Source: Obrimoposthia wandeli
Lineage: Eukaryota
Assembly (NCBI GenBank): GCA_977020255.1
Contig: CDROCS010000253.1
Span: forward strand, 4,340,001-4,404,000
Direction of reading: 5' to 3'
Length of the DNA: 64,000 bases
A program made the position numbers and the translations under genes. The notes below the pieces were generated by a model. It was not told the origin of the DNA, made no database searches, and saw nothing but the letters and a program-made list of their open reading frames with translations. Below are positions 3,007 through 45,300 of the stretch, piece after piece (within the stretch, counting starts at the first letter, position 1; each line of letters begins with the position of its first letter).

Positions 3007-3708
3007 TTATAAATTTTTCATATCTTCTGCTGTGGTATGACGTACAACCTTACCTTTGACAAAATAAATGATGTATTCACATATGTTTTGACAGCGGTCA
3101 CCAATACGTTCAAGTGCGCGTGCTGACCAAATAACCGTCATTACTTGTGGAATTGAACGTGGATCTTCCATCATATAAGTCATTAATTGACGCATTAGCG
3201 CTTCATATTCACGGTTAATTTTGTCATCCGTTTGATGAATTTTAATCGCTGTTTCACAATCCATACGGGTAAATGCATCAAGACTAGCCTGTAAGAACTC
3301 TAATACTCGTCGACCTAGGTTATCTAGATTAACCAGTAAATCTTGCTGCGATGAAGAAAAACTCTCTAGCGCAACTTTGGCTATTTTTTCGGCTTCATCA
3401 CCTATTCTTTCTAAGTCAGCTATGGTTTTCACAACGGCCATAATTAAACGTAAGTCGCCAGCCGCCGGTTGGCGTTTGGCAATAATACGCGTACATTCAT
3501 CATCAATGCTGACTTCATAAGCATTAACTTGATAGTCGTTAGTTAATACTTGTTTGGCCAAGGCAACATCTGCTTGTTCAACAGCAGCGAGTGCATCGGT
3601 TAGTTGTTTTTCAACTAAACCGCCCATATGCATGACATTATTAATGACGCGTTCTAAATCTTCATTGAACTGGCCAGAAATATGACGGCCAATTTGTAAG
3701 TTATCCAT
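3007..3708 (-). CDS. phoU: Phosphate signalling complex protein PhoU
   Basis: HISGQFNEDLE, IAKRQPAAGDLR, DLERIGD, ARALERIGDRCQNICEYIIYFVKG. Confidence 0.97.
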   Translation of the reverse strand: MDNLQIGRHISGQFNEDLERVINNVMHMGGLVEKQLTDALAAVEQADVALAKQVLTNDYQVNAYEVSIDDECTRIIAKRQPAAGDLRLIMAVVKTIADLERIGDEAEKIAKVALESFSSSQQDLLVNLDNLGRRVLEFLQASLDAFTRMDCETAIKIHQTDDKINREYEALMRQLMTYMMEDPRSIPQVMTVIWSARALERIGDRCQNICEYIIYFVKGKVVRHTTAEDMKNL

Positions 3709-3812: not shown

Positions 3813-4652
3813 CTAACCATAACGGCCGGTAATATAATCTTCAGTTTTCTTTTTCAGTGGTGTAGTAAATAAAGTATTGGTATCACTGTACTCTATTAAA
3901 TCACCCATATACATAAATGCTGTTTGATCGGATACCCGTGCTGCTTGTTGCATATTATGAGTAACAATTACCACAGTAAATTGTTTTTTAAGATCATTGA
4001 TTAACTCTTCAATAGTCAAGGTTGAAATAGGATCAAGTGCTGAAGTAGGCTCATCAAGTAGCAATACCTCAGGTTGGATAGCAATAGCACGGGCAATCAC
4101 TAAACGTTGTTGCTGTCCACCAGAGAGACCTAAAGCACTTTCGTGCAACCTGTCTTTTACTTCATTCCAAAGCGCAGCACTGCGTAATGATTGCTCAGCA
4201 GCTTCATCAAGTTTTCTGCGGTTATTCTCACCCATAATACGTAGACCATAAACCACATTCTCATAGATGGTTTTAGGGAAAGGGTTAGGTCGTTGAAACA
4301 CCATACCGACTTTTCGCCTTAGCTCGGCAACATCAACGTGTTTATCATAGATGTTATTGCCATGAAGGTTTATCTCGCCACTTATATGACAATCATCAAC
4401 TAAATCGTTCATACGATTAATAGAGCGTAATAACGTAGATTTACCACAACCACTTGGACCAATGAACGCTGTTACCTGCCCTTTGGGAATAGACATAGTA
4501 ATATTATTTAGCGCTTGTTTTTTACCATAGAATAAATTTAATTTATTAATATCTAAGGCAACTTGATCTGGTGTTAAATTAGTTAAGTCTAACTTTTTTG
4601 CAAAGGATGTATCTGAGCCAGGCGTTAACGCTTTTGGGCTAATAGAAATCAT
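3813..4652 (-). CDS. pstB: Phosphate ABC transporter ATP-binding protein
   Basis: Walker [49 protein letters not shown]. Confidence 0.97.
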
Positions 4653-4782: not shown

Positions 4783-6453
4783 CTAGTGCTCTAACATCTT
4801 ATATCTTTCACGTAATTTATTACGAATTGAAACAGCGGTCATATTTAAAGCAACGATGATAGTCACTAATAGTAAGGCTGTTGCAAAAACCAATGGACGT
4901 GCAGCTTCAACATTAGGACTTTGGAAACCAACATCATATATATGAAAGCCTAAATGCATGAACTTTCTATCTAAGTGTAAGAATGGGAAGTTACCATCCA
5001 AAGGTAGGTTAGGTGCCATTTTAACTACACCAACCAACATTAATGGCGCAACCTCACCAGCTGCTCTAGCAATAGCTAAGATTATACCTGTCATAATTGC
5101 AGGGCTCGCGATAGGTAAAATGATACGCCACAAGGTCTCAGCTTTGGTTGCACCTAATGCTAATGAACCATGACGCATCGCCGATGGAATGCGTGATAAA
5201 CCTTCCTCTGTTGAAACAATAACTACCGGTAAGGTTAATATGGCTAACGTTAACGCTGACCATAAAACACCAGGCGTACCAAAAGTAGGGCTTGGTAAAT
5301 TTTCTGAATAAAATAATTGGTCAAGTGAGCCACCCACCATATAAACAAAGAACCCTAAACCAAATACCCCGTAAACAATAGAGGGAACGCCGGCTAAGTT
5401 GATAACCGCAATGCGTAGCAGCTTAGTAAATGCATTTTTACCGGCATACTCATGTAGGTAGATAGCCGCGATAACACCAAACGGTGAAACAATGACTGTC
5501 ATTAATAACACCATAAGCACGGTACCAAAAATAGCAGGGAATACACCGCCTTCTGTATTAGCTTCGCGAGGGTCTTCGATGAGAAATGAACCAATATGGC
5601 TAAAGAATAATGCCGTTTTCTCAAAGGTATTAAGTTGATTATTAAATGTGACTTTAAGAATATATTCAAAGTTAATAGTCACAAGTTGACCGTCCATAGC
5701 ACGCATCACAATATGATCACGTGATATCTGCTTTCGATATCCCATCAGCTCTTTTTCTAGTATTTCATAGTCCTGGTTCAGTGCCGCTATTTCACTATCA
5801 ATTTCTACTTGTAACTCAGCGGTTAGCTTATCTTGCAATTGATATTTACGCGTTTTTAAGCGCAAACGTTCTAATTGATAGTTGATAGCACCAATATCTG
5901 ACTTTTGTAAATCATCGATCTGGTCTTGAAAATTATCAACACGCGTTAATAATTCATCCAATTTGTTTTTATCTACTTCAATTCCATCAACGACAACGCT
6001 TTCAATGAAACCGTAAAAGTTACCATGAGTGCGACGTTCAACGACAACTAAATCTTTTGGTGTTTGTGTCTTTTGAATGTTATGACTTAACAACCAACGA
6101 AAATCTAAACTCACCAACTCGCGGTTACCTGTTTTGATTAACAGGCGCTCTAATATTTCTTGTTCTGGATCAAGCGCCAAATTTAAATGTGCTAATTGGC
6201 TTACCGGAATTTGCTCTCTATCGTAGATTTCACCAATAACAACACTCTTAGCGCCATGTTGATCGGTAAGATCAAATTGATATAAGTCACTTGGCCAAAA
6301 ATATGACAAGCCACGTGATGCGATAAGCCATAAAAGGCCTAACACTGAAATTAAACTGATACTTACGCCACCTGCCGATAGCCATATCCACGGTGAACCC
6401 GACCTAAACCATTTATTCATAAAGTAACTCATTATTGGTGAGTGACTTTTCAT
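4783..6453 (-). CDS. pstA: Phosphate ABC transporter permease PstA (long form with periplasmic coiled-coil region)
   Basis: EGGVFPAIFGT, NLAGVPSIVYG, RHGSLALGATK, ARAAGEVAP; true start may be 6432 or 6420. Confidence 0.95.
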   Translation of the reverse strand: MKSHSPIMSYFMNKWFRSGSPWIWLSAGGVSISLISVLGLLWLIASRGLSYFWPSDLYQFDLTDQHGAKSVVIGEIYDREQIPVSQLAHLNLALDPEQEILERLLIKTGNRELVSLDFRWLLSHNIQKTQTPKDLVVVERRTHGNFYGFIESVVVDGIEVDKNKLDELLTRVDNFQDQIDDLQKSDIGAINYQLERLRLKTRKYQLQDKLTAELQVEIDSEIAALNQDYEILEKELMGYRKQISRDHIVMRAMDGQLVTINFEYILKVTFNNQLNTFEKTALFFSHIGSFLIEDPREANTEGGVFPAIFGTVLMVLLMTVIVSPFGVIAAIYLHEYAGKNAFTKLLRIAVINLAGVPSIVYGVFGLGFFVYMVGGSLDQLFYSENLPSPTFGTPGVLWSALTLAILTLPVVIVSTEEGLSRIPSAMRHGSLALGATKAETLWRIILPIASPAIMTGIILAIARAAGEVAPLMLVGVVKMAPNLPLDGNFPFLHLDRKFMHLGFHIYDVGFQSPNVEAARPLVFATALLLVTIIVALNMTAVSIRNKLRERYKMLEH

Positions 6454-6609: not shown

Positions 6610-8943
6610 CTACATTGAACTGTATTTTTCTCGTAATCGTTGACGAACAAACTCTGCTGCTGTGTTGAAAATAAAGGTGAAGATAAAGAGCACAAAGGCG
6701 GCCAAGAATAAGATTCGGTAGTGGGAGCTACCCACTTCAGACTCGGGCATTTCTACAGCAATATTTGCTGCAAGCGTTCTCATGCCCTGGAAGATACTCC
6801 AATCTAAAATTGGTGTATTACCTGTTGCCATCAAGACAATCATAGTTTCACCAACCGCACGACCAAGGCCCATCATCACAGCAGAAAATATGCCGGGACT
6901 GGCAGTTAGCAGTACCACACCGATTAATGTTTGCCATTGTGTTGCCCCTAACGCTAATGAACCGCTGGTTAAATGACCTGGCACACTGAAAATAGCATCT
7001 TCAGCCATAGAAAAGATGGTAGGAATAACAGCAAAGCCCATGGCAATACCAACCACTAACGCGTTACGCTGATCAAAGTTGATACCTAAGTCATTCGTTA
7101 GGTATTGACGCATGTCGCCATTAAACAATGTCAATTCAAGTACACCGGACAAAGAAAAGGCGGCATAAGCAGCCAATATCATTACCGGTATTAACAACAG
7201 TGGTGCTAATGTCTCTGGCAATTTGTCTTTCCAAGTATTGGGAAGGTTATGCCATGCAAAGGCAGTGATTAGTGTCGACAGCGGTAGAAAGATAAAGAGT
7301 AGAAATATTGCTGGTAAATATTCTTCCATTATTGGCGCTAGCCATAAACCAGCTAAGAAACCTAGAATAACGGTAGGTAATGCTTCCATCATTTCAATGG
7401 TAGGTTTAACTTTTTTACGCATGCCTGGTGTCATAAAGTAGGCAGTATATATCGCAGCAGTTAAGGCGATAGGTACGGCGAATAACATCGCATATAAAGC
7501 CGCCTTAATGGTGCCAAAAGAGATAGGAACTAAAGAAAATTTACCTTCAAAATCATCAGAGCCTGATGTTGATTGCCAGATATAGTCTGGCTCTGGATAG
7601 CCTTCATACCAAACTTCCTGCCATAACGCTTGCCAAGTAACTTCTGGATGTTCATTGTGAACAGTAAAAGCTTGTAAGCTTCTCTTGTTAGCATCAAGGG
7701 GATCCTCACCAATAACAATCAAACCATTTGCTCTGGGCGCTATAGCAAACGCTTCTGGTTGGCTTGATGCAATTTTCCCTTGCCATAAATGCGCAGCACT
7801 CGTGGTATAAAAAACATTGACCATGCCACTTTGTGTCATGGTGTAAAAACTTTTTCTAAACTGCTCAGTATAAATAGCCGCTATCGCATTTGATGTTTGG
7901 CTGTTCTTATCATATTTAGCATTATCATTTGTATCAAAACTTCTAATTTGCTTAAACTGGCGACCTGCATCTGTTGCTACTTCAAACCATTGACTAACTC
8001 GACCACTACTATCACCAAGCAAAACAGAACTACTGCCTGAGAGTAGCGCCATAGAAGTGAGGTAAGTATTTTCATTATCTAGTGTCGGTGTAATTGTTGC
8101 TTTAAGGCTGACTTCTTCGTCATCGCTGAGCGAATACACATACACCGTTGAAGCACTTCGAATAAAAGCTAGACTTAAATCAGGTGTGACTTTAATTTCA
8201 TCAATGGTGTCATTAAGCAACTCAATTTGTTGAAAAATGGTTTCATATTCAACTTCATCTCCATCACTAGAAGAACTAAAGTCATCTTCGGCAATAAAGC
8301 TGGTTTTTATTAAACGTTTATCTTGGGTAAAGCCAACAAAAACGATTCTTTCATCATCCATTGCAAAGGCTAATTGAGAAAGCGGTGTTTGCTGTTCATC
8401 AATAATTAATGAACTTTGACCTAGAGGGTAATTTACTTGGGGAATAATTTCACGTGTATCATTCGCGTATTTAGCATAAAAACTCGGCTGAATTAATAAG
8501 GTATGCCCTTTGGCGGTATGCAGTAATTTATTCGCTGAAAAAGAGTTAACAACACTAACTACCTCTTCTTGATTAAAATCGTCATTTGCAAACAAAGATG
8601 TTGAAAGTGAATGATCACCAACAGCAAACTGGTTACTCGCTTCAGAGGCGCTGGCTTTTAAATGATAGAAATCAATATTACCCGCTTCAGTAATTTCATA
8701 AGCCACTTCTTGTAGCTCATCAACACCAGTACTTAACACTTTTTCGTTAGCATTTAAGTCAAGGCTAATACTAACCTTCGGCTCAATTTGAGCAGACTCA
8801 AAAATAGGCTTTACGACATAAAGTAAATACAAAAAAATCAACACAAGGGTAAACAAAACGCTAATACCACCAAGGGTTATTAACCATTTTGCCAATGAGT
8901 TTTTAATCCCACGGCTTCGATTCGAACTAATAAGAGTTGCCAC
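6610..8943 (-). CDS. pstC: Phosphate ABC transporter permease PstC (long form with large periplasmic domain)
   Basis: GTG start; LVPISFGTIKA, EMMEALPTVILG, GLGRAVGETM, RTLAANIAVEMPE. Confidence 0.93.
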   Translation of the reverse strand: MATLISSNRSRGIKNSLAKWLITLGGISVLFTLVLIFLYLLYVVKPIFESAQIEPKVSISLDLNANEKVLSTGVDELQEVAYEITEAGNIDFYHLKASASEASNQFAVGDHSLSTSLFANDDFNQEEVVSVVNSFSANKLLHTAKGHTLLIQPSFYAKYANDTREIIPQVNYPLGQSSLIIDEQQTPLSQLAFAMDDERIVFVGFTQDKRLIKTSFIAEDDFSSSSDGDEVEYETIFQQIELLNDTIDEIKVTPDLSLAFIRSASTVYVYSLSDDEEVSLKATITPTLDNENTYLTSMALLSGSSSVLLGDSSGRVSQWFEVATDAGRQFKQIRSFDTNDNAKYDKNSQTSNAIAAIYTEQFRKSFYTMTQSGMVNVFYTTSAAHLWQGKIASSQPEAFAIAPRANGLIVIGEDPLDANKRSLQAFTVHNEHPEVTWQALWQEVWYEGYPEPDYIWQSTSGSDDFEGKFSLVPISFGTIKAALYAMLFAVPIALTAAIYTAYFMTPGMRKKVKPTIEMMEALPTVILGFLAGLWLAPIMEEYLPAIFLLFIFLPLSTLITAFAWHNLPNTWKDKLPETLAPLLLIPVMILAAYAAFSLSGVLELTLFNGDMRQYLTNDLGINFDQRNALVVGIAMGFAVIPTIFSMAEDAIFSVPGHLTSGSLALGATQWQTLIGVVLLTASPGIFSAVMMGLGRAVGETMIVLMATGNTPILDWSIFQGMRTLAANIAVEMPESEVGSSHYRILFLAAFVLFIFTFIFNTAAEFVRQRLREKYSSM

Positions 8944-9017: not shown

Positions 9018-9051
9018 AGTATAAGTCAGTTATATGACAATTTTATTACAA
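9018..9051 (-). promoter_or_regulatory. PhoB-dependent promoter of pstCAB-phoU
   Basis: Minus strand TTGTAAT-AAAA-TTGTCAT (9051-9034), 10-nt spacer, then TATACT (9023-9018); same geometry as E. coli Pho promoters. Confidence 0.85.
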
Positions 9052-36882: not shown

Positions 36883-39198
36883 ATGATCAAACGTATTCTG
36901 CCTATTTATCATACGGGTTGGTTTTATCTACTGCTATTATTCTGGGGGTTTTGCTATTGGTCTGTTGCCATCGGCGGCTTAAACCAGCTTAATCAATTAA
37001 ACATTCATTGGCTCAATCAGCTTAAACTGTCTCCTGATCTATCAGAAATACAACCGACATTAGCGACTACTGATATATTAACGTTACAATCCGGATTCGA
37101 TAAACAAGATATAGAGTCAGTAACTACTCTTTTGTCATATTACCCTAATAGTCAGATAACCTTTTTAGGTCAACAATCAGACTTTTTTATGAAAAAAATT
37201 GAGGGTTATTTATCCTTAACACCTCGTAATAATAAAATTGTTATCAACTCAACCAAAATCTCCTCAGAACCGCCATTAAAACCTCAAGCCACAATGGCTT
37301 TTTCACCACTGCTCAATTGGTTTCGTTTTTCCTCCAAAGCTAACGCTGATATTTTGAGAACAAGGTACTTTATCTTTTCGCCTTTATTGCAAGATGCCCG
37401 ACAAAGCTTTCCTTTGGTATGGCACCAACAAGGGAAAATACACCTCAGTTTACCCGCCGAAATATTAAAGCAATTACACTCAAATACTGAACTTTTTATC
37501 AAACAAGATTGGCAATTAAGTTTAATAAGACAAGACAATACTTTAGCCGCTAAAAAATTAGCTTTGGGATTTTTTGGTGAAATATTTATTGCAGCAAACT
37601 TACTTACTATTAATCAAGTAAGTCTAAACAATCAAGAACGCCAACAAAATTCAGCATCGACTTTATCTAGGTTAACTTCTGTTAGTCACTTTATTCAGCA
37701 ATATCCTTCAATCTCTAACACTAATTCAATACCTAACTACAAAGTTATCATCATTACCGATAATAAATTCTCGCATGATAAAGTACTCAAACCATTGCTT
37801 CAAAAGTTAGTTCAGCAAGACTATTTAATCCAAAGCTTACTGATTATTATCTTTGCTTGGTTGCTCTTTTTTCTGGGTATTACTCTCGTTTGGTTCATAC
37901 GTTCGTTATCCTTAAAACAGCAACTAATCAGTGTGCTTAGTTACATATTATCCCTTTTTATTCTGCAATATTTCTTGTTCAATCAACGACAATGGCTTGA
38001 AGTGATACCGGTAATAATGGCGATAATTGGGACATGGCTCTTACTATTAGCTTATCAAAAAGAATATAAGCACTTTGTAGCAGCGTTGAATTATCGAGTC
38101 TCTTCAAATGAGAGTCATGAATCTACAGTGTCGATTAGACCCAATAAAAAAAATATTTTAAGCAACAAAAAAGTACAGCCTCCTCAAGTAAAAAGCAGTG
38201 TCTATTTACCTGAAGAAAAAACAAATACAGCAAGCCAAAGCCAATTAAAGTCGATGAATACAGTCTTACCCGTCCCTGAGGACTATATTGAACAAACATT
38301 GCTCATACTTGATGATCCAGTACAAAATAAAACCTCTATCAATCAGCAAATAACTGTTGAAAATTTTGGCCGCTACCAAGTAGAAGGCGTTTTAGGACAA
38401 GGCGCAATGGGCATTGTTTATCAAGGTGTTGACCCTAAAATAAACCGCCATGTTGCTATAAAAACACTGCAATTGAGTAACGACATTGATTCTGCAGAAT
38501 TTGGTGAAGCTAAGGAACGCTTTTTTAGAGAGGCACAAACAGCCGGTGGCTTAAGCCACGCCAATATAGTCACCATTTATGATGTAGGTGAGGATAATAA
38601 CTTAGGTTATATCGCCATGGATTTACTTACAGGCGCGCCATTATCATTATTTACCCAACCTGGACAAACACTACCTATACCATTGCTTTATCAATTATTG
38701 ATTCAGATAACCGATGCGCTAGATTATGCCCATAAACAAAATGTTGTTCATCGTGATATCAAGCCAGCTAATATTATTTACGATGATGACTTGCTCAAAG
38801 TGACAGTAACTGATTTTGGTATCGCCTACGTCAGCGATAACAGTAAAACCCGAACAGGTATTATTATGGGGAGTCCGTATTATATGTCTCCAGAACAAAT
38901 ACTTGGCTTAAAAGTAGATGGTCGTAGCGACATTTTCAGCTTAGGCGTGACTTTCTATCAATTGCTCTGTGGCCACTTACCTTTTGAAGGCGAGTCCATT
39001 GCAACTGTCGCCTATCAAATAACAAAAGCGAAAGCCATTGCCGTCACTCAACGCAATATCAACTTACCCACTAGTGCCATGCGTATTTGTAGTAAAGCTA
39101 TGCATAAAGACATTAAAAAGCGTTACCAATCAATGGCTGAATTTAAGTTGGCATTAACAAATGCGCTCAAACGAGACTTTAAGATCACGGCTAACTAA
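36883..39198 (+). CDS. Membrane Hanks-type Ser/Thr kinase with a CHASE2-like sensor architecture
   Basis: N-terminal TM, periplasmic region, 3 TMs; kinase motifs GQGAMG, VAIK, HRDIKPAN, DFG, GSPYYMSPE and DGRSDIFSLG are intact. The CHASE2 call rests on topology only. Confidence 0.85.
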   Translation: MIKRILPIYHTGWFYLLLLFWGFCYWSVAIGGLNQLNQLNIHWLNQLKLSPDLSEIQPTLATTDILTLQSGFDKQDIESVTTLLSYYPNSQITFLGQQSDFFMKKIEGYLSLTPRNNKIVINSTKISSEPPLKPQATMAFSPLLNWFRFSSKANADILRTRYFIFSPLLQDARQSFPLVWHQQGKIHLSLPAEILKQLHSNTELFIKQDWQLSLIRQDNTLAAKKLALGFFGEIFIAANLLTINQVSLNNQERQQNSASTLSRLTSVSHFIQQYPSISNTNSIPNYKVIIITDNKFSHDKVLKPLLQKLVQQDYLIQSLLIIIFAWLLFFLGITLVWFIRSLSLKQQLISVLSYILSLFILQYFLFNQRQWLEVIPVIMAIIGTWLLLLAYQKEYKHFVAALNYRVSSNESHESTVSIRPNKKNILSNKKVQPPQVKSSVYLPEEKTNTASQSQLKSMNTVLPVPEDYIEQTLLILDDPVQNKTSINQQITVENFGRYQVEGVLGQGAMGIVYQGVDPKINRHVAIKTLQLSNDIDSAEFGEAKERFFREAQTAGGLSHANIVTIYDVGEDNNLGYIAMDLLTGAPLSLFTQPGQTLPIPLLYQLLIQITDALDYAHKQNVVHRDIKPANIIYDDDLLKVTVTDFGIAYVSDNSKTRTGIIMGSPYYMSPEQILGLKVDGRSDIFSLGVTFYQLLCGHLPFEGESIATVAYQITKAKAIAVTQRNINLPTSAMRICSKAMHKDIKKRYQSMAEFKLALTNALKRDFKITAN

Positions 39199-39249
39199 TA
39201 AGTAAATAAACGAATACAGTAAAGTGCCACGCTCCAAAATAAAATAAAG

Positions 39250-40008
39250 GTGAAAACAGTTACTCCTATGAATTATCACATTAAATCCCTGTGTCATCAG
39301 GGCGCGATTCGAGACAATAACGAAGATGCGATTAGTTACGGCACCAATAAAAAGTCAGGTGTTACATGGATGTTAGTGGCAGATGGCATGGGTGGTCATA
39401 ATGCCGGAGAAGTTGCTAGCGCCATGTTAGTTGACTGTATCCAATGCGCGTGGGATAAAATATCGGTAACTGAGCCCCCTCATTGGGAAACATGGATCAC
39501 AAACCAACTTAATGCTGCCAACATAGCCATTCTTAATCAAGCAAAGAATAGTGTTATCCAACAAGGTATGGGCACTACTGGCGTATTGATGGTGATAGAT
39601 AAAAAAGAATGCCACTTAGGCTGGGTTGGTGACTCCCGCGCATATACGTTAAGAAAGAATGATTTAGTACAAGAAACAGTCGATCACACCATGATTCAAG
39701 AATTAGTCAATAAAGGAGCGCTCAGCGCTGAAACTGCAAAGAATGCTAAGTCTAAAAATTTGCTTTCACAAGCGATTGGCGTTCGAGAAAAAATATCGGT
39801 TGATACCGTAACTATTGCGATAGATAGTGGCGATACTATTATGCTATCAACAGACGGCTTGCACGACTATTTAACTGAACAAGAAATTAATCATTACTTA
39901 GCTGAGTTTTCTATAGAAAAAGATGTCTGTGATGACATGATCAATCAAGCTATAGCTCAAAACAGTAGAGATAACCTGACGGTAGGTTTAATCCATTTGA
40001 ACAATTGA
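39250..40008 (+). CDS. PP2C-family Ser/Thr phosphatase (Stp1/PrpC-like)
   Basis: RDNNED, VADGMGGHNAGEVAS, VGDSRAY, STDGL, SRDNLT; start may be ATG 39268. Confidence 0.93.
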   Translation: MKTVTPMNYHIKSLCHQGAIRDNNEDAISYGTNKKSGVTWMLVADGMGGHNAGEVASAMLVDCIQCAWDKISVTEPPHWETWITNQLNAANIAILNQAKNSVIQQGMGTTGVLMVIDKKECHLGWVGDSRAYTLRKNDLVQETVDHTMIQELVNKGALSAETAKNAKSKNLLSQAIGVREKISVDTVTIAIDSGDTIMLSTDGLHDYLTEQEINHYLAEFSIEKDVCDDMINQAIAQNSRDNLTVGLIHLNN

Positions 40009-40247
40009 ATAAAGAAACTAAATATAAATTAACTAGGCGTTTATTTGGTTTATGTAACCTAAGTGGTGACGATGTCATCAATAAAGGTAGTTGCTCGAAG
40101 ATGTTTTACTTATAGGATGTGTAAATGGCGATGATATTCAATCTGGTGAAAAAACCAATCATGATGATTGCCCACCACAGGCTTTAGCTAATTCCATTTG
40201 ATGGAATAGCTATCAACCAATGTTGATGATGTGCTTTTTAGTTTTAT

Positions 40248-40388
40248 CTAGTTAAGTTGGCTACTGGTTGGCAATTCATATACTTCAATTATTGCTTGAT
40301 TGAAATGGGACTGTCTACGTGAAGTCATTTTATGATGCTGGCGACTTAACTGTTTTCTACGTTGATTATTTTTTAATGGTCTTTTCAT
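40248..40388 (-). CDS. Uncalled 46-aa basic small protein, predicted Pho regulon member
   Basis: Hand translation MKRPLKNNQRRKQLSRQHHKMTSRRQSHFNQAIIEVYELPTSSQLN*; GGA 9 nt before the ATG; starts about 30 nt after a PHO-box promoter. Confidence 0.6.
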   Translation of the reverse strand: MKRPLKNNQRRKQLSRQHHKMTSRRQSHFNQAIIEVYELPTSSQLN

Positions 40389-40424
40389 TTTAAGAATTCC
40401 AATTGGCTTTTAAATAGTCTAATT

Positions 40425-40458
40425 ACTATAGCCTGCTATCGTGACAGTTTTATGACAG
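40425..40458 (-). promoter_or_regulatory. Consensus PHO box with -10 element
   Basis: Minus strand CTGTCAT-AAAA-CTGTCAC (40458-40441), 10-nt spacer, then TATAGT (40430-40425). Confidence 0.88.
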
Positions 40459-40613
40459 AAAAAATTCAAAGATGTAGGAGGATAATTACCCTTAATTTTC
40501 TGGCATGAAAATCAAAAAAACGTAATATTAGTAATCAATAGCTTATTATCAAATCGTCTACTGTGATGAACTTACTATAATTAATAGCTATAAAAAATCG
40601 TTACACGGCTAAT

Positions 40614-42230
40614 TTATTGAGCCGTTTCATTTTTCACTTCACTTTCCTTTAAAATACTCTCAGTCGAGTTTTTCTCTGATGTCGATTCTTTTAATAGTTC
40701 ATTCATTAATGGCTCATCCATTAGTGATAATGCTTTAATATTCTCTTGTGCTAGCTTTAATGCAATAGCCTGCTCTTTGGCTTGATCATCTAACCAGCTT
40801 AAGGTGTCGTAATAGCGACGAATATTGTCAACGTACTCGACTGGCTCTTCACCACGGGCATAACCATATTTAGTGCTTTTGTAATATTTTTTCTGTTGTA
40901 ATAACGGCAAACGACTTTTAACTTCTACCCAACGATCAGGATCACCGCCTTGGCGCTGGGTTATAATCCTCGCATCATTTAAATGGCCAAAACCAATATT
41001 GTAAGAAGCTAACGCAAACCAAATACGATCTGGCGTCGGAATTCTATCAGGCATCTTGGCAATCATACGCTTAAAGTATTTTGCGCCGCCTCTAATGCTT
41101 TGTTCTGTGTCTAAGCGGCTTTTTATACCCATTTGTTTCGCTGTTGCTAACGTCAGCATCATCATACCGCGAACACCGGTATATGAACGCGCCCTTGGAT
41201 TCCAGTGTGACTCTTGGTAGCTAATAGCAGCCAGTAAACGCCAATCAAGTTCTTGCGCATACTTCTCAAATAACGACTGATACTTAGGTAAAGTCTTTGC
41301 TACTGCCTTAATAAACGTTCGGGTTTCAACATAATTGAATTGTTCAATATGACCATAGTATTTATCATCCAGCGCCAACAGAGTGCCATCATGATGAACA
41401 GTGCCAAAAAACTCCACCAAGCTTGCTAAGATATCATCGTCGCTATTTTTACTTACCATCCAAGCCAAGGGTTCTGGTTTATCAATACTAAAACCAATAC
41501 TTATCTCTGGGTAATAACGACGGTTAATGGCTAAATTATTACTATCAATAATGGTGTAATCTATTTCACCACTTAATACTTTTCTCAGTAGCTCTTCGCT
41601 ATCGAATTCGCTGGTTTCTTGCCAAACCAACTCGCTATTTGTTTGTTTTAACTTTTCAAGGTTTTCTACATAACTTGACCCAGAAGTAACCATTAATTTA
41701 CCTGTTAAATCAGCCACTTCCCTCGGCCTTACCTTGCCTTGCTTAAAGACTAGCTTCTGGCTGATAGTTTCATAGCTGGGGGAAAATCTAAAACGCTGCA
41801 AGCGTTTATCAGTAATTGATAATCCCGCAGCAAGCAGGTCGACTTCGCCGGTATTTAATTTAATAAAAAGTTCATCAAGGCTATACGTTGGGATAATGCG
41901 TAATTCAACATTGAGTGAGTTTGCGTATTTTTTTGCTAGCTCATATTCAAAACCAGCAAAGCCGTTTGCTGTAGAGTAATAGTTTGTTGGGCCGAAAATG
42001 GTACCTACATTGATATAACCTCTCGCTAAAATGCGAGATAAATTTGAAGAGTCATTTTCTTTATCACAAGCACTTAATAATACTGTGCTAAAAACAACCA
42101 ATAGCAACGAGGTAAACTTAGTCACTAACTTACTAGTGAGCTTAGATTTTATTGAAAAAGATAAATATTTAGTCATGGAGGTAATTGTGTCGTGTATTGT
42201 TCTATTAGCCAAGCATTTTTTACTTGACAC
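40614..42230 (-). CDS. mltF: Membrane-bound lytic murein transglycosylase F
   Basis: SBP domain ([15 protein letters not shown]) plus SLT domain ([29 protein letters not shown]); divergent from purL; start may be 42176. Confidence 0.95.
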
Positions 42231-42260
42231 TACTGTTAAGTTTTTACTTGACTTTTTCCA

Positions 42261-42296
42261 TTAACAAAAGCGTTATTTTCAACTATAATACGCGCG
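42261..42296 (+). promoter_or_regulatory. Sigma70 promoter of purL with a GC-rich discriminator
   Basis: TTAACA-17 nt-TATAAT followed by ACGCGCG. Confidence 0.6.
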
Positions 42297-42377
42297 AAAT
42301 TTTCGGTTAGCTTTTACTATGCAAATTTAGCAGTTAAAAGCCAATCAAAGCCTTACATAAAACTTGGTGATTACCCT

Positions 42378-45300
42378 ATGACGATGTTGATTAAAAACCT
42401 TCGTGGCGCTCCAGCACTTTCTGATTTTAGAGTTGAGAAGTTATTAGCTCAATGTGAGCAGTTACAACTGCCTGTTAGCGATATTTATGCTGAATTTGCC
42501 CATTTCGCTCAGCTTAATGAAGAATTAAGCGCAAGCGAAGAGAATGTTTTACAGCAATTACTTACTTACGGTCCAACAATTGAAGAACACCAACCTACAG
42601 GTTTGTTCTTATTAGTGACTCCTCGTCCGGGCACTATTTCTCCTTGGTCATCAAAATCTACTGATATAGCGCACAACTGTGGTTTAGCTAAAGTGGTTCG
42701 TTTAGAGCGCGGTATTGCCTATTACGTATCTTTGCAAAGCGATGCACAATTAAGCGCTGAACAAGAAATACAGCTAAACGCTTTATTACACGACCGTATG
42801 ATGGAAAGTATTTTTAATGACTTCGATCAGACAAGTTTATTGTTTACTAGCAGTGAGCCAGCTAAATTAACCGCGATTGATATTGAAAATGGCGGAAAAG
42901 AAGCATTAGTTAAGGCTAATATAGAATTAGGCTTAGCCTTAGCAGTCGATGAAGTTAATTACTTATTCGAGAACTTTACTAAACTAGGTCGTAATCCTCA
43001 CGATATAGAGCTTTACATGTTTGCTCAAGCAAACTCAGAACATTGTCGTCATAAAATATTCAACGCTGACTGGACGATTGACGGTGTTAAACAAGAAAAA
43101 TCATTATTTAAAATGATCCGTAATACCCACGAAATCAACCCTGATTACGTACTTAGCGCTTACAGTGATAATGCCGCGGTAATGGTTGGTAATAAAGGTG
43201 GTCGCTTCTTCCCGAACCCTGAAACGAATATTTATGGTTACAACCATGAAGATATTCAAATCTTGATGAAAGTTGAAACCCATAACCATCCTACCGCTAT
43301 TTCTCCATACCCTGGTGCTGCAACAGGCTCAGGTGGTGAGATTCGTGATGAAGGTGCAACCGGTATCGGTTCAAAACCTAAAGCAGGTTTAGTGGGTTTC
43401 TCTGTATCTAACTTACGTATTCCTGACTTTGTACAACCTTGGGAAACAGATTTTGGCAAACCAAGCCGCATCGTAACGGCTTTTGACATCATGATGGAAG
43501 GTCCATTAGGTGGCGCAGCATTTAATAATGAATTTGGTCGCCCAGCTATCTTAGGTTACTTCCGTACGTATGAAGAAGAAGTTAACTCATTTAACGGTAA
43601 AGAAGTACGTGGTTACCACAAGCCAATTATGCTTGCTGGTGGTTTAGGTAACATCCGTGATGAACATGTACAAAAACGTGAAATCATCGTTGGCGCTAAC
43701 CTTATTGCTTTAGGTGGCCCAGCAATGAACATTGGTTTAGGTGGCGGTGCTGCTTCATCAATGGCTTCTGGTCAATCAGCTGAAAGCTTAGACTTTGCTT
43801 CTGTTCAACGTGAAAACCCAGAAATGGAACGTCGTTGCCAAGAAGTTATCGATAAGTGTTGGCAGCTAGGCGAAGAAAACCCAATTGCTTTCATTCATGA
43901 TGTGGGTGCCGGTGGTTTATCTAATGCTTTCCCTGAGTTAGTTGCTGATGGCGGCCGTGGTGGTGTATTTGAACTACGTAAAGTACCAAATGACGAACGC
44001 AGCATGGCACCTCATGAGATTTGGTGTAACGAATCTCAAGAACGTTATGTTATTGCCGTATCAGACCATAACCTAGCGATTTTTGAACAAATATGTGCCC
44101 GTGAACGTGCGCCATATGCGGTTGTTGGTCGTGCGACTGAAAAATTACATTTAACCGTTACTGATGAACATTTCGCTAACGATGAAAAGCTAAATACGCC
44201 AATCGATTTACCACTTGACGTATTATTAGGTAAAACACCTAAAATTTATAAAGACGTTAAAACAGCAACGGCTGCTGGTGATTCACTCGATTTAAGTACT
44301 GTGACATTAGCTGACGCTGCTGACAGAATTTTAAGCTTACCAACCGTTGCTGAAAAAACCTTCCTAATTACCATTGGCGATCGCTCGGTAACAGGTATGG
44401 TTAATCGCGATCAAATGGTTGGTCCTTGGCAGGTTCCTGTTGCCGATTGTGGTGTTACTGCATCAGCACTAGATTCATACCACGGTGAGGCAATGTCATT
44501 AGGTGAACGTACACCGGTTGCCTTATTAAACTTTGGCGCTTCTGCTCGTTTAGCAGTAGCTGAATCACTAATGAACATTGCTGGTACTGATATTGCTGGT
44601 TCTGACGGTGAGAGGTTAAACCGTATTAAGCTTTCTGCTAACTGGATGTCGCCAGCCGGTCATCCTGGTGAAGATGCAGGTCTTTACGAAGCGGTTAAAG
44701 CCATTGGTGAAGAACTTTGTCCAGCGCTTGGTTTAACTATTCCTGTGGGCAAAGACTCTATGTCGATGAAAACCCAGTGGGAAGATGATGGTGAAACGAA
44801 ATCTGTGACCTCTCCAATGTCGTTAATTATTACCGCTTTTGGTGCTGTTGAAGATATCCGCAAAACGGTTACCCCTGAATTAAGAACAGATAAAGGTGAC
44901 ACTTGCCTTATTGCTATCGACTTATCTCAAGGTAAAAAACGTTTAGGTGGTTCATGTTTAGCACAAGTTTACAAACAACTGGGTAGTGAAACACCGGATG
45001 TTGATAGCCCTGAAGTATTGAAAGGTTTCTTCAACGCGATGCAGACACTTGTTCGCGCTGAAAAAGTTATTGCTTACCATGATATTTCAGACGGTGGTTT
45101 ATTCACTACAGTGACTGAAATGGCTTTTGCGGGTCATACCGGTGTTGATATTGACATCAGTAAACTAGTTAGTGTAAATGAAGCAAACGGTGCAAGTGAT
45201 GATTTAGCGACATTATTTAATGAAGAGTTAGGTGCTGTCATTCAAGTTTTTGCAAGCGATGTAGATGCAATTCATACTATTTTAGCTGAGCACGGCGTTC

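What the first reader, a model, noticed from the sequence alone, without database searches (positions are those of the whole stretch)
40248..40458. Consensus PHO-box promoter drives an uncalled 46-aa basic microprotein
Seen: on the minus strand, CTGTCAT-AAAA-CTGTCAC, exactly 10 nt, then TATAGT. About 30 nt past the likely start site is GGA-N9-ATG and an ORF MKRPLKNNQRRKQLSRQHHKMTSRRQSHFNQAIIEVYELPTSSQLN. It has 10 Lys/Arg and 3 His, all within the first 28 residues, and is below the ORF-track cutoff. Known: this 7-4-7 box placed 10 bp before -10 is the classic PhoB-activated promoter, and it matches consensus better than the pstC box in this window. Inference: an undescribed phosphate-starvation small protein that might bind RNA, ribosomes or polyphosphate, or a dual-function sRNA. 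I do not recognise it as Rmf, Sra, ArfA or YtfK.
Basis: partly seen in the sequence, partly recalled or inferred. Interest (0 to 1): 0.75.

Follow-up and report, generated by a model that had tools for sequence, protein, structure and literature searches.

The report
Phosphate-starvation gene for tiny basic protein
A real, widely conserved gene for a 46-residue, very basic helical protein of unknown function sits just after mltF in this Colwellia chromosome, behind a textbook phosphate-starvation (PhoB) promoter, so it is probably an undescribed member of the marine phosphate-starvation response.

Summary
On the minus strand, CTGTCATAAAACTGTCAC (40458-40441) is followed by 10 nt, TATAGT, a GGA Shine-Dalgarno and a 46-aa ORF (40388-40248). 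It is not chance.

- **Gene conservation:** the ORF is intact directly downstream of mltF in 73 of 80 Colwelliaceae loci. It also occurs in Pseudoalteromonas, Glaciecola/Brumicola, Agarivorans, Celerinatantimonas and Vibrio, one copy per genome.
- **Coding:** median dN/dS is 0.17, and 0.11 for residues 1-33.
- **Promoter conservation:** a composite motif (two TGTCAT repeats, 10 nt, -10 hexamer) lies upstream of the ORF in 62 of 68 Colwelliaceae loci. Only 2 matches occur elsewhere in 1.74 Mb.
- **PhoB link:** the Colwellia chromosome has three perfect matches: phoBR, a gapdh(-arsJ) operon and this gene.

The protein has pI about 11.7, and AlphaFold2 models it as one helix. It matches no Pfam, NCBIfam or PDB entry. 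It is not ArfA, RMF, YtfK or L34, and canonical ArfA and RMF genes lie elsewhere in Colwellia. Public annotations call it "hypothetical protein", and I found no paper on it.

PhoB control and translation are inferred, because no RNA data were available. The molecular function is open. My best guess is binding of a polyanionic partner such as rRNA or the ribosome.

The parts
40614..42230 (-). mltF (membrane-bound lytic murein transglycosylase F), the conserved upstream neighbour and synteny anchor
   Evidence: 538-aa ORF. Orthologues of 61-89% identity were found in Colwelliaceae. The small ORF lies directly downstream of mltF in nearly all of about 113 species examined.
40590..40637 (-). Hairpin (core ACGGCT..AGCCGT, 40625-40605) plus a U-run (40599-40592) spanning the mltF stop codon. 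Possible weak mltF terminator.
   Evidence: RNA fold of -15 kcal/mol, z = -2.05; coordinates. Function is inferred only.
40441..40458 (-). PHO box: two 7-bp direct repeats, CTGTCAT and CTGTCAC, separated by AAAA. Predicted PhoB dimer site taking the place of a -35 element.
   Evidence: Exact match, unique in the window. One of only three perfect composite matches on the Colwellia contig C253; the other two are at phoBR and gapdh. Conserved in 62 of 68 Colwelliaceae loci and 28 of 45 more distant loci.
40425..40430 (-). -10 hexamer TATAGT, exactly 10 nt after the PHO box. The predicted transcription start is near 40418.
   Evidence: The 10-nt spacing to a nATAnT hexamer is kept across relatives while the spacer sequence varies. 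The start site is inferred and not measured.
40398..40400 (-). Shine-Dalgarno core GGA, 9 nt before the ATG
   Evidence: A GGA/GAG-type core lies at -18..-4 in 60 of 68 relatives.
40248..40388 (-). Small-protein gene: 46 codons plus TAG. Basic helical N-terminal part (residues 1-33) and a variable polar/acidic tail.
   Evidence: - ORF listed.
- 17 close homologues of 46-80 aa.
- dN/dS 0.17 overall and 0.11 for residues 1-33.
- AlphaFold2 model: one helix over residues 6-38, mean pLDDT 84.
- pI 11.7.
40143..40212 (-). 3' untranslated structures: hairpin at 40212-40185, then a short palindrome followed by U6 (40170-40149). Possible terminator or stabiliser; the transcript would then be about 270 nt.
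   Evidence: Fold (z = -1.5, weak). Partly conserved among the closest Colwellia, with different stem sequences. No canonical intrinsic terminator was scored. Inferred.

Best explanation
This is a monocistronic gene for a 46-aa, highly basic, single-helix cytoplasmic protein. It belongs to an uncharacterised family of about 36-59 aa encoded just 3' of mltF in marine Alteromonadales-type bacteria and some vibrios.

**Regulation (inferred from sequence).** Transcription is driven by a class-II-like PhoB promoter. Under phosphate limitation, phosphorylated PhoB would bind the two TGTCA repeats at 40458-40441, which stand where a -35 element would be. It would recruit sigma-70 RNA polymerase to the TATAGT 10 bp downstream. 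The result would be a short mRNA with a roughly 30-nt leader, translated from the GGA-N9-ATG site.

**Shown here:**
- The motif and ORF are present.
- There is protein-level purifying selection.
- Synteny with mltF is conserved.
- The promoter geometry is conserved.
- The same motif is used at phoBR, pstS and pstC in Colwellia.

**Inferred:** PhoB binding, induction by phosphate limitation, and translation.

**Molecular function (inferred, about 35% likely).** The Arg/Lys/Gln-rich helix binds a polyanionic partner during phosphate starvation, most plausibly rRNA or the ribosome. The next candidates are polyphosphate or DNA, or an acidic signalling protein.
For: **Coding**
- The ORF is intact in 73 of 80 Colwelliaceae mltF loci.
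- It is also intact in more distant genomes: 142 of 401 in the GTDB family and 35 of 401 in the order. The three genomes reached through loci and every listed match show one copy per genome.
- In the two sets of distant loci examined, 19 of 20 and 18 of 21 are directly downstream of mltF.
- Median dN/dS is 0.17, and 0.11 for residues 1-33. Third codon positions vary most.
- R10 and R24 are invariant; K20 and R25 are nearly invariant (F29 too in A1).

**Promoter**
- The composite motif (two TGTCAT repeats with at most 2 mismatches, 10 nt, -10 hexamer) occurs in 62 of 68 loci upstream of the ORF, against 2 hits elsewhere in 1.74 Mb.
- In the more distant set it occurs in 28 of 45 loci, against 4 hits elsewhere in 319 kb.
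- In the alignment of the 11 closest sequences, the box, spacer and -10 are almost invariant, while sequence 5' of the box cannot be aligned.

**PhoB identity of the motif**
- C. demingiae has three perfect genome-wide hits: one upstream of an OmpR-type regulator followed by PhoR, one upstream of a GAPDH gene, and this gene. One-mismatch hits lie upstream of a PstS-like gene and at a pstC-like box (same box sequence as the window's pstC promoter; downstream gene not annotated here).
- The window's own contig has the same three hits. phoB lies about 80 nt after the motif at C253:2077668.

**Monocistronic**
- The downstream gene differs between lineages (PP2C, hemW-like, tadA-like, others) and is mostly convergent.

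**Protein**
- AlphaFold2 gives a single helix over residues 6-38, with block-mean pLDDT 97-98 over residues 11-30.
- Family pI ranges from 11.0 to 12.0, with median net charge +9.
Against: - **No expression data.** No RNA run holds the locus, and the laid contigs say nothing about transcripts.
- **Direct tests missing.** PhoB binding, the start site and translation are untested.
- **The PHO box is not universal.** It is weak or absent in the Vibrio members, some Pseudoalteromonas or Glaciecola-like members, and a few loci where the ORF abuts mltF. The gene may therefore also be read through from mltF.
- **No canonical intrinsic terminator** was found.
- **Function rests on composition and a single-helix model only.** Conservation along the helix shows no clean one-face periodicity. 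There is no similarity to any characterised protein.
Confidence: 0.8

Rival explanations
1. The gene and its PhoB promoter are real, but the protein is a feedback or connector regulator. It would bind a protein of the phosphate-signalling machinery (PhoR, PhoU, PstB, or SpoT as YtfK does) rather than nucleic acid.
For: - Known PhoB-linked small proteins act this way. YoaI is induced by PhoB and binds EnvZ (10.1101/2024.09.13.612970).
- Small DUF1127 proteins act on PhoR (PMC12501420 abstract).
- Specific residues are invariant (R10, K20, R24, R25, F29) rather than only bulk charge.
- DUF1107/YtfK was not found in the three Colwelliaceae genomes searched.
Against: - There is no homology to YtfK, DUF1127 or YoaI.
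- Celerinatantimonas and Vibrio carry both YtfK and this gene, so it is not a simple replacement.
- The extreme charge (pI about 12) is more typical of nucleic-acid binders.
Confidence: 0.2
2. The transcript is mainly a PhoB-regulated regulatory RNA. Either it is dual-function or the ORF is incidental.
For: - The transcript would be short and monocistronic.
- It has a structured, partly conserved 3' region.
- No translation data exist.
Against: - Purifying selection at the protein level (dN/dS 0.11-0.17), with synonymous changes dominant.
- The reading frame is kept open in more than 100 species at 24-80% amino-acid identity, even where the nucleotide sequence no longer aligns.
- A Shine-Dalgarno core is present in 60 of 68 relatives.
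- No Rfam match.
Confidence: 0.06
3. The gene is real, but the direct repeat is bound by a regulator other than PhoB, or the gene is expressed mainly by read-through from mltF. It would then not be phosphate-controlled.
For: - Many OmpR-family regulators bind direct repeats.
- The box is degenerate or missing in Vibrio and some other lineages, and the ORF abuts mltF in a few.
Against: - The identical composite motif sits at phoBR, and close variants sit at pstS and pstC, in the same genomes.
- It matches the E. coli PHO-box consensus exactly, including the 10-bp distance to the -10 element (established knowledge: Makino/Wanner PHO-box definition).
Confidence: 0.08
4. Both the motif and the ORF are chance features of an AT-rich spacer.
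For: Short ORFs and promoter-like hexamers are common in AT-rich DNA. The generic promoter scan finds 8 sites in this region against 5.7 expected.
Against: All the conservation and enrichment results above.
Confidence: 0.01

Closest known systems
E. coli PhoB-activated promoters (phoA, pstS, phoB; the PHO box)
   Same: - 18-bp box of two CTGTCAT-type repeats with an A/T-rich 4-bp spacer.
- The box sits 10 bp upstream of the -10 element and there is no -35 hexamer.
- The same motif is used at phoBR, pstS and pstC in Colwellia.
   Different: The gene downstream is a 46-aa protein of an unknown family. PhoB binding and phosphate control are not demonstrated for this organism.
YtfK (DUF1107), a PhoB-regulated small cytoplasmic protein of E. 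coli that acts on SpoT (my own knowledge of the literature)
   Same: It is a small, soluble protein whose gene is a monocistronic Pho-regulon member.
   Different: - No sequence relation: PF06526 is not hit.
- YtfK is 68 aa and is not an Arg-rich helix.
- Both genes coexist in Vibrio and Celerinatantimonas.
YoaI, a PhoB-induced 34-aa protein of E. coli (10.1101/2024.09.13.612970)
   Same: It is a very small protein transcribed from a PhoB-dependent promoter.
   Different: YoaI is a transmembrane protein that binds EnvZ. The protein here has no hydrophobic segment and carries about +8 net charge.
Small basic ribosome-binding proteins: RMF (PF04957), ArfA (PF03889), Sra (PF08136), bL34
   Same: Similar size (45-72 aa), strong positive charge and a link to stress. 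UniRef labels some family members 'ArfA' (Vibrio kanaloae) or 'L34' (Pseudoalteromonas).
   Different: - No Pfam or NCBIfam match for 14 members scanned in Pfam (six of them also in NCBIfam), even at E up to 10.
- Canonical ArfA and RMF genes lie elsewhere in Colwellia genomes.
- The UniRef labels are therefore unsupported.
Small DUF1127 proteins of Agrobacterium that act on PhoR (PMC12501420)
   Same: They are Arg-rich proteins under 50 aa connected with phosphate regulation (abstract).
   Different: There is no DUF1127 match. They come from a different phylum, and those proteins are not described as PHO-box driven in the abstract I read.

Membership tests
Pho regulon promoter (PHO box) | Two 7-bp direct repeats close to CTGTCAT, separated by a 4-bp A/T-rich spacer | tested here: met
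   Exact match CTGTCAT-AAAA-CTGTCAC at 40458-40441. It is the only zero-mismatch hit in the window.
Pho regulon promoter (PHO box) | Box placed 10 bp upstream of a -10 hexamer, in place of a -35 element | tested here: met
   A 10-nt spacer is followed by TATAGT. The same spacing is kept in 62 of 68 and 28 of 45 relatives.
Pho regulon promoter (PHO box) | The same motif is present at core Pho genes of the same organism (phoBR, pst) | tested here: met
   Perfect composite hits on C253 lie at phoB (about 80 nt upstream), at gapdh and at this gene. In C. demingiae they lie at phoBR, with one-mismatch versions upstream of a PstS-like gene and at a pstC-like box. A pstC box is present in the window.
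Pho regulon promoter (PHO box) | PhoB~P binding, and transcription dependent on phosphate limitation and on phoB | not testable with these tools
   No RNA runs hold the locus. This needs EMSA or footprinting and expression assays.
ArfA (PF03889) | Match to the ArfA profile | tested here: not met
   No hit at E up to 10 for 14 members, including the Vibrio protein labelled ArfA in UniRef. Canonical ArfA lies elsewhere in two Colwelliaceae genomes.
RMF (PF04957) | Match to the RMF profile | tested here: not met
   No hit. All five genomes searched have canonical RMF genes elsewhere.
YtfK / DUF1107 (PF06526) | Match to the DUF1107 profile | tested here: not met
   No hit. DUF1107 genes are separate loci in Vibrio and Celerinatantimonas.
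Ribosomal protein bL34, Sra, DUF1127 | Match to the respective Pfam profile | tested here: not met
   None of these families appears in the Pfam scans of 14 members at E up to 10. The profile of the family finds nothing in PDB sequences.
New small-protein family (mltF-linked basic helix) | 36-59 aa; motif around R10, K20, R24-R25 and F/Y29; encoded directly 3' of mltF on the same strand; one copy per genome | tested here: met
   Alignments A1 and A2. Synteny. One match for each genome listed, and one in each of the three genomes reached through loci. Only 55 clusters, all 36-69 aa, among 1.84 billion representatives.

The most novel reading that the evidence does not exclude
The family is a dedicated phosphate-starvation ribosome or rRNA factor of marine gammaproteobacteria. 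A PhoB-induced Arg-rich helix would bind ribosomes, either to silence or protect them or to gate their breakdown for phosphorus salvage. That would make it a Pho-regulon counterpart of RMF or Sra with no sequence relation to them.
Probability: 0.2. Interest if true: 0.8.

Novelty: new member of a known kind. Interest (0 to 1): 0.55.

Why it matters
Phosphorus often limits marine heterotrophs, and Colwellia, Pseudoalteromonas, Glaciecola and vibrios are abundant responders.

- **Rank in the regulon.** This gene carries one of the three best PhoB promoters in the Colwellia chromosome, on a par with phoB's own promoter.
- **Age.** The gene has been kept next to mltF across several families.
- **Gap in knowledge.** It has no Pfam or NCBIfam model, no structure and no paper that I could find.

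It therefore looks like a missing, probably abundant, output of the phosphate-starvation response. It is small enough to be overlooked by proteomics and annotation.

It is directly testable in culturable strains such as Colwellia psychrerythraea, Pseudoalteromonas and Celerinatantimonas. The result would show how cells handle their largest phosphorus pool (RNA) or how they tune Pho signalling. This work also corrects misleading UniRef labels (ArfA, L34).

Tried and rejected
- **Rfam scan** of 39000-42500 at E up to 10: only noise.
- **Pfam and NCBIfam scans** of 14 family members in Pfam (six also in NCBIfam): nothing above noise.
- **Family profile against PDB sequences:** no hit.
- **ESM Atlas feature search:** only unnamed small clusters with scores below 0.8.
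- **Structure search:** not run, because a single helix gives meaningless fold matches.
- **Expression:** The look-up of sequencing runs found no RNA run. Read laying on four runs gave only low-depth contigs, with no information on starts or levels.
- **Leader peptide or operon with a downstream gene:** rejected, because the downstream gene varies and is mostly convergent.
- **Replacement of YtfK:** weakened, because both genes coexist in Celerinatantimonas and Vibrio.
- **One conserved helix face:** not supported; the periodicity of conservation is broad.
- **Literature:** searches by topic and by accession found no paper on the family.
- **Relatives search from G000:** I worked through loci of the mltF search instead.
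- **Fetching C253 DNA around phoB:** I replaced it with a protein search that placed phoB at C253:2077781.

Full report
**1. Observation**

- CTGTCAT-AAAA-CTGTCAC at 40458-40441.
- Ten bases of spacer.
- TATAGT at 40430-40425.
- A roughly 30-nt leader containing GGA at 40400-40398.
- An ATG at 40388 opening a 46-codon ORF that ends with TAG at 40250-40248.

The 18-mer is the only zero-mismatch match to CTGTCATNNNNCTGTCAY in the window; the next best has two mismatches. A generic sigma-70 scan does not pick the site, as expected for a promoter without a -35 element. It also finds no canonical terminator. Rfam has nothing here.

**2. Context**

- The window lies on contig C253 of a 1.35-Gb mixed assembly. 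C253 is a Colwellia chromosome: MltF is up to 89% identical to C. demingiae and PhoB is 97% identical.
- Upstream on the same strand is mltF (40614-42230), with purL divergent from it.
- Downstream, convergent, are a PP2C phosphatase and a Ser/Thr kinase.

**3. Is the ORF a gene?**

*Close homologues.* A word-based protein search found 17 homologues of 46-80 aa. Several are annotated 'hypothetical protein' in NCBI Colwellia genomes.

*Colwelliaceae loci.* I fetched 80 Colwelliaceae loci with MltF as the anchor.
- tblastn and ORF extraction found an intact 36-59-aa ORF directly downstream of mltF in 68 loci.
- A profile search rescued five more.
- One MAG has an open frame without an obvious start.
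- Three loci end too early to judge, and three lack the gene.

*Selection.* Median pairwise dN/dS among the closer Colwellia is 0.17, and 0.11 for residues 1-33. Third codon positions are the most variable. R10 and R24 are invariant; K20, R25 and F29 are nearly so.

*Wider distribution.*
- A profile search of 1.84 billion representative proteins found only 55 clusters, all 36-69 aa.
- Six-frame genome searches found a match in 142 of 401 genomes of the GTDB family and in 35 of 401 of the order. Every listed match is one per genome, and the three genomes reached through loci each have one copy.
- The weak hits are real. In 19 of 20 and 18 of 21 fetched loci, the hit lies just after mltF.
- Exact look-ups name them as Vibrio, Agarivorans, Celerinatantimonas, Pseudoalteromonas and Glaciecola/Brumicola proteins. 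All are 'hypothetical' at NCBI, with stray UniRef labels 'ArfA' and 'L34'.

*Not an operon leader.* The gene downstream of the small ORF differs between lineages and is mostly convergent. The ORF is therefore not a leader for another gene.

**4. Is the promoter real, and is it a PhoB promoter?**

*Conservation.*
- Anchoring the relatives on their best box shows nTGTCAT-N4-nnGTCAT, exactly 10 nt, then a -10 hexamer (TATAGT, AATAAT, GATACT or CATAAT). The spacer and leader vary.
- A composite rule (at most 2 mismatches in the two TGTCAT cores, 10 nt, a -10 hexamer with A2 and T6) is met upstream of the ORF in 62 of 68 loci. It is met only twice elsewhere in 1.74 Mb of the same loci, both strands.
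- In the more distant set, with a slightly laxer -10 rule, it is met in 28 of 45 loci, against 4 hits elsewhere in 319 kb.
- An alignment of the 11 closest sequences shows a sharp footprint. Sequence 5' of the box cannot be aligned; the box, spacer and -10 are nearly invariant; the coding region changes mostly at synonymous sites.

*Identity of the motif.*
- In C. demingiae the perfect composite pattern occurs three times in 5.2 Mb. One hit is upstream of an OmpR-type response regulator followed by a PhoR-domain kinase. One is upstream of a GAPDH gene. One is upstream of this ORF.
- One-mismatch versions lie upstream of a PstS-like binding protein and at a box that matches the window's pstC promoter box; I did not annotate the gene behind that second site.
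- The window's own contig C253 has the same three perfect hits. The one at 2077668 lies about 80 nt before phoB at 2077781.
- The hit at 113093 is the gapdh-arsJ promoter noted earlier by this scan (s1-204580).
- The window also holds an overlapping box array before its pstC-like gene.
- The motif therefore marks the core Pho genes of this organism.

*Limits.* The box is degenerate in the two Vibrio loci. They share a conserved TGTCAT-N5-AGTAAC-N10-TATAAC about 150 nt upstream. The box is weak or absent in some Pseudoalteromonas and Glaciecola-like loci and in loci where the ORF abuts mltF. PhoB control is widespread in the family but not universal, and read-through from mltF may add basal expression. 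A hairpin with a U-run spans the mltF stop.

**5. The protein**

- AlphaFold2 with the family alignment gives one helix over residues 6-38. Mean pLDDT is 84, and 97-98 as block means over residues 11-30.
- The family has pI 11.0-12.0 and a median net charge of +9. Its first 33 residues are 20% Arg, 13% Lys and 13% Gln.
- The sequence shows no hydrophobic stretch that could serve as a signal peptide or transmembrane segment.
- Conservation shows no clean single-face periodicity.
- There is no Pfam, NCBIfam, PDB or Atlas relative.
- Canonical ArfA and RMF genes exist elsewhere in Colwellia genomes. DUF1107/YtfK was not found in three Colwelliaceae genomes but coexists with this gene in Vibrio and Celerinatantimonas.

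**6. Mechanism**

*Regulation (inferred from sequence and comparison).* At low phosphate, PhoR phosphorylates PhoB. A PhoB dimer binds the two repeats and recruits sigma-70 polymerase to TATAGT. This gives a short monocistronic mRNA starting near 40418, which is translated from GGA-N9-ATG.

*Function (inference from composition and fold only).* A roughly 5.6-kDa poly-cationic helix most likely binds a polyanion. I rank the options as follows:
- rRNA or the ribosome, about 0.35.
- A signalling protein acting as a feedback connector, as for YoaI, YtfK or the DUF1127 proteins, about 0.2.
- Polyphosphate or DNA, lower.

**7. Expression data**

None could be obtained. No RNA run holds the locus, and the contigs laid on it are uninformative.

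**8. Literature**

Topic and accession searches found no description of this family.

**9. Verdict**

Its functional ideas remain untested. The regulatory logic is classical, and the protein family is uncharacterised. I file it as a new member of the Pho regulon, of moderate to high interest, because it is conserved, ranks among the strongest PHO boxes in the genome and can be tested directly.

Noticed in passing
G000 as a whole; contig C253: The 'genome' is a 1.35-Gb, 6912-contig mixed assembly. PhoB homologues of 36-70% identity sit on many other contigs (C122, C506, C1089 and others), so several bacteria are present besides the Colwellia chromosome C253.
   Followed up: partly
G000:C253:113093-113125 (-); L162 in C. 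demingiae: A perfect PHO-box plus -10 composite lies upstream of a GAPDH-family gene. This is the gapdh-arsJ operon of earlier finding s1-204580. It is one of only three perfect hits on the chromosome.
   Followed up: partly
window 9023-9051 (-), with ORFs 6610-8943, 4783-6453, 3813-4652 and 3007-3708 (-): An overlapping PHO-box array (TTGTAAT-AAAA-TTGTCAT-ATAA-CTGACTT) lies upstream of an unusually long (777-aa) PstC-like gene. ORFs the size of pstA, pstB and phoU follow it.
   Followed up: no
window 36883-39198 (+) and 39250-40008 (+): A membrane-anchored eukaryote-type Ser/Thr kinase (771 aa) and a PP2C phosphatase lie convergent to the small gene. The PP2C is conserved at this position in the closest Colwellia only.
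   Followed up: no
P0073 (Vibrio), P0085/P0086/P0088 (Pseudoalteromonas): UniRef names members of this family 'Ribosome alternative rescue factor ArfA' or '50S ribosomal protein L34'. Pfam scans do not support either name.
   Followed up: yes
G001, G002, G003 (Colwelliaceae) versus G492 (Vibrio), G651 (Celerinatantimonas): DUF1107/YtfK was not found in the three Colwelliaceae genomes searched, but it is present in the Vibrio and Celerinatantimonas genomes. Two RMF copies are present in G001 and G003.
   Followed up: no
L151 and L159 (Vibrio), about 150 nt upstream of the small ORF: The two Vibrio species share TGTCAT-ATTGC-AGTAAC-N10-TATAAC and a long leader. This could be a degenerate PHO box or another promoter.
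   Followed up: no
L053:4846-4950 (+): In one Colwellia MAG the homologous frame opens right after a stop codon without an obvious start codon. It may be a pseudogene, a non-canonical start or an assembly error.
   Followed up: no
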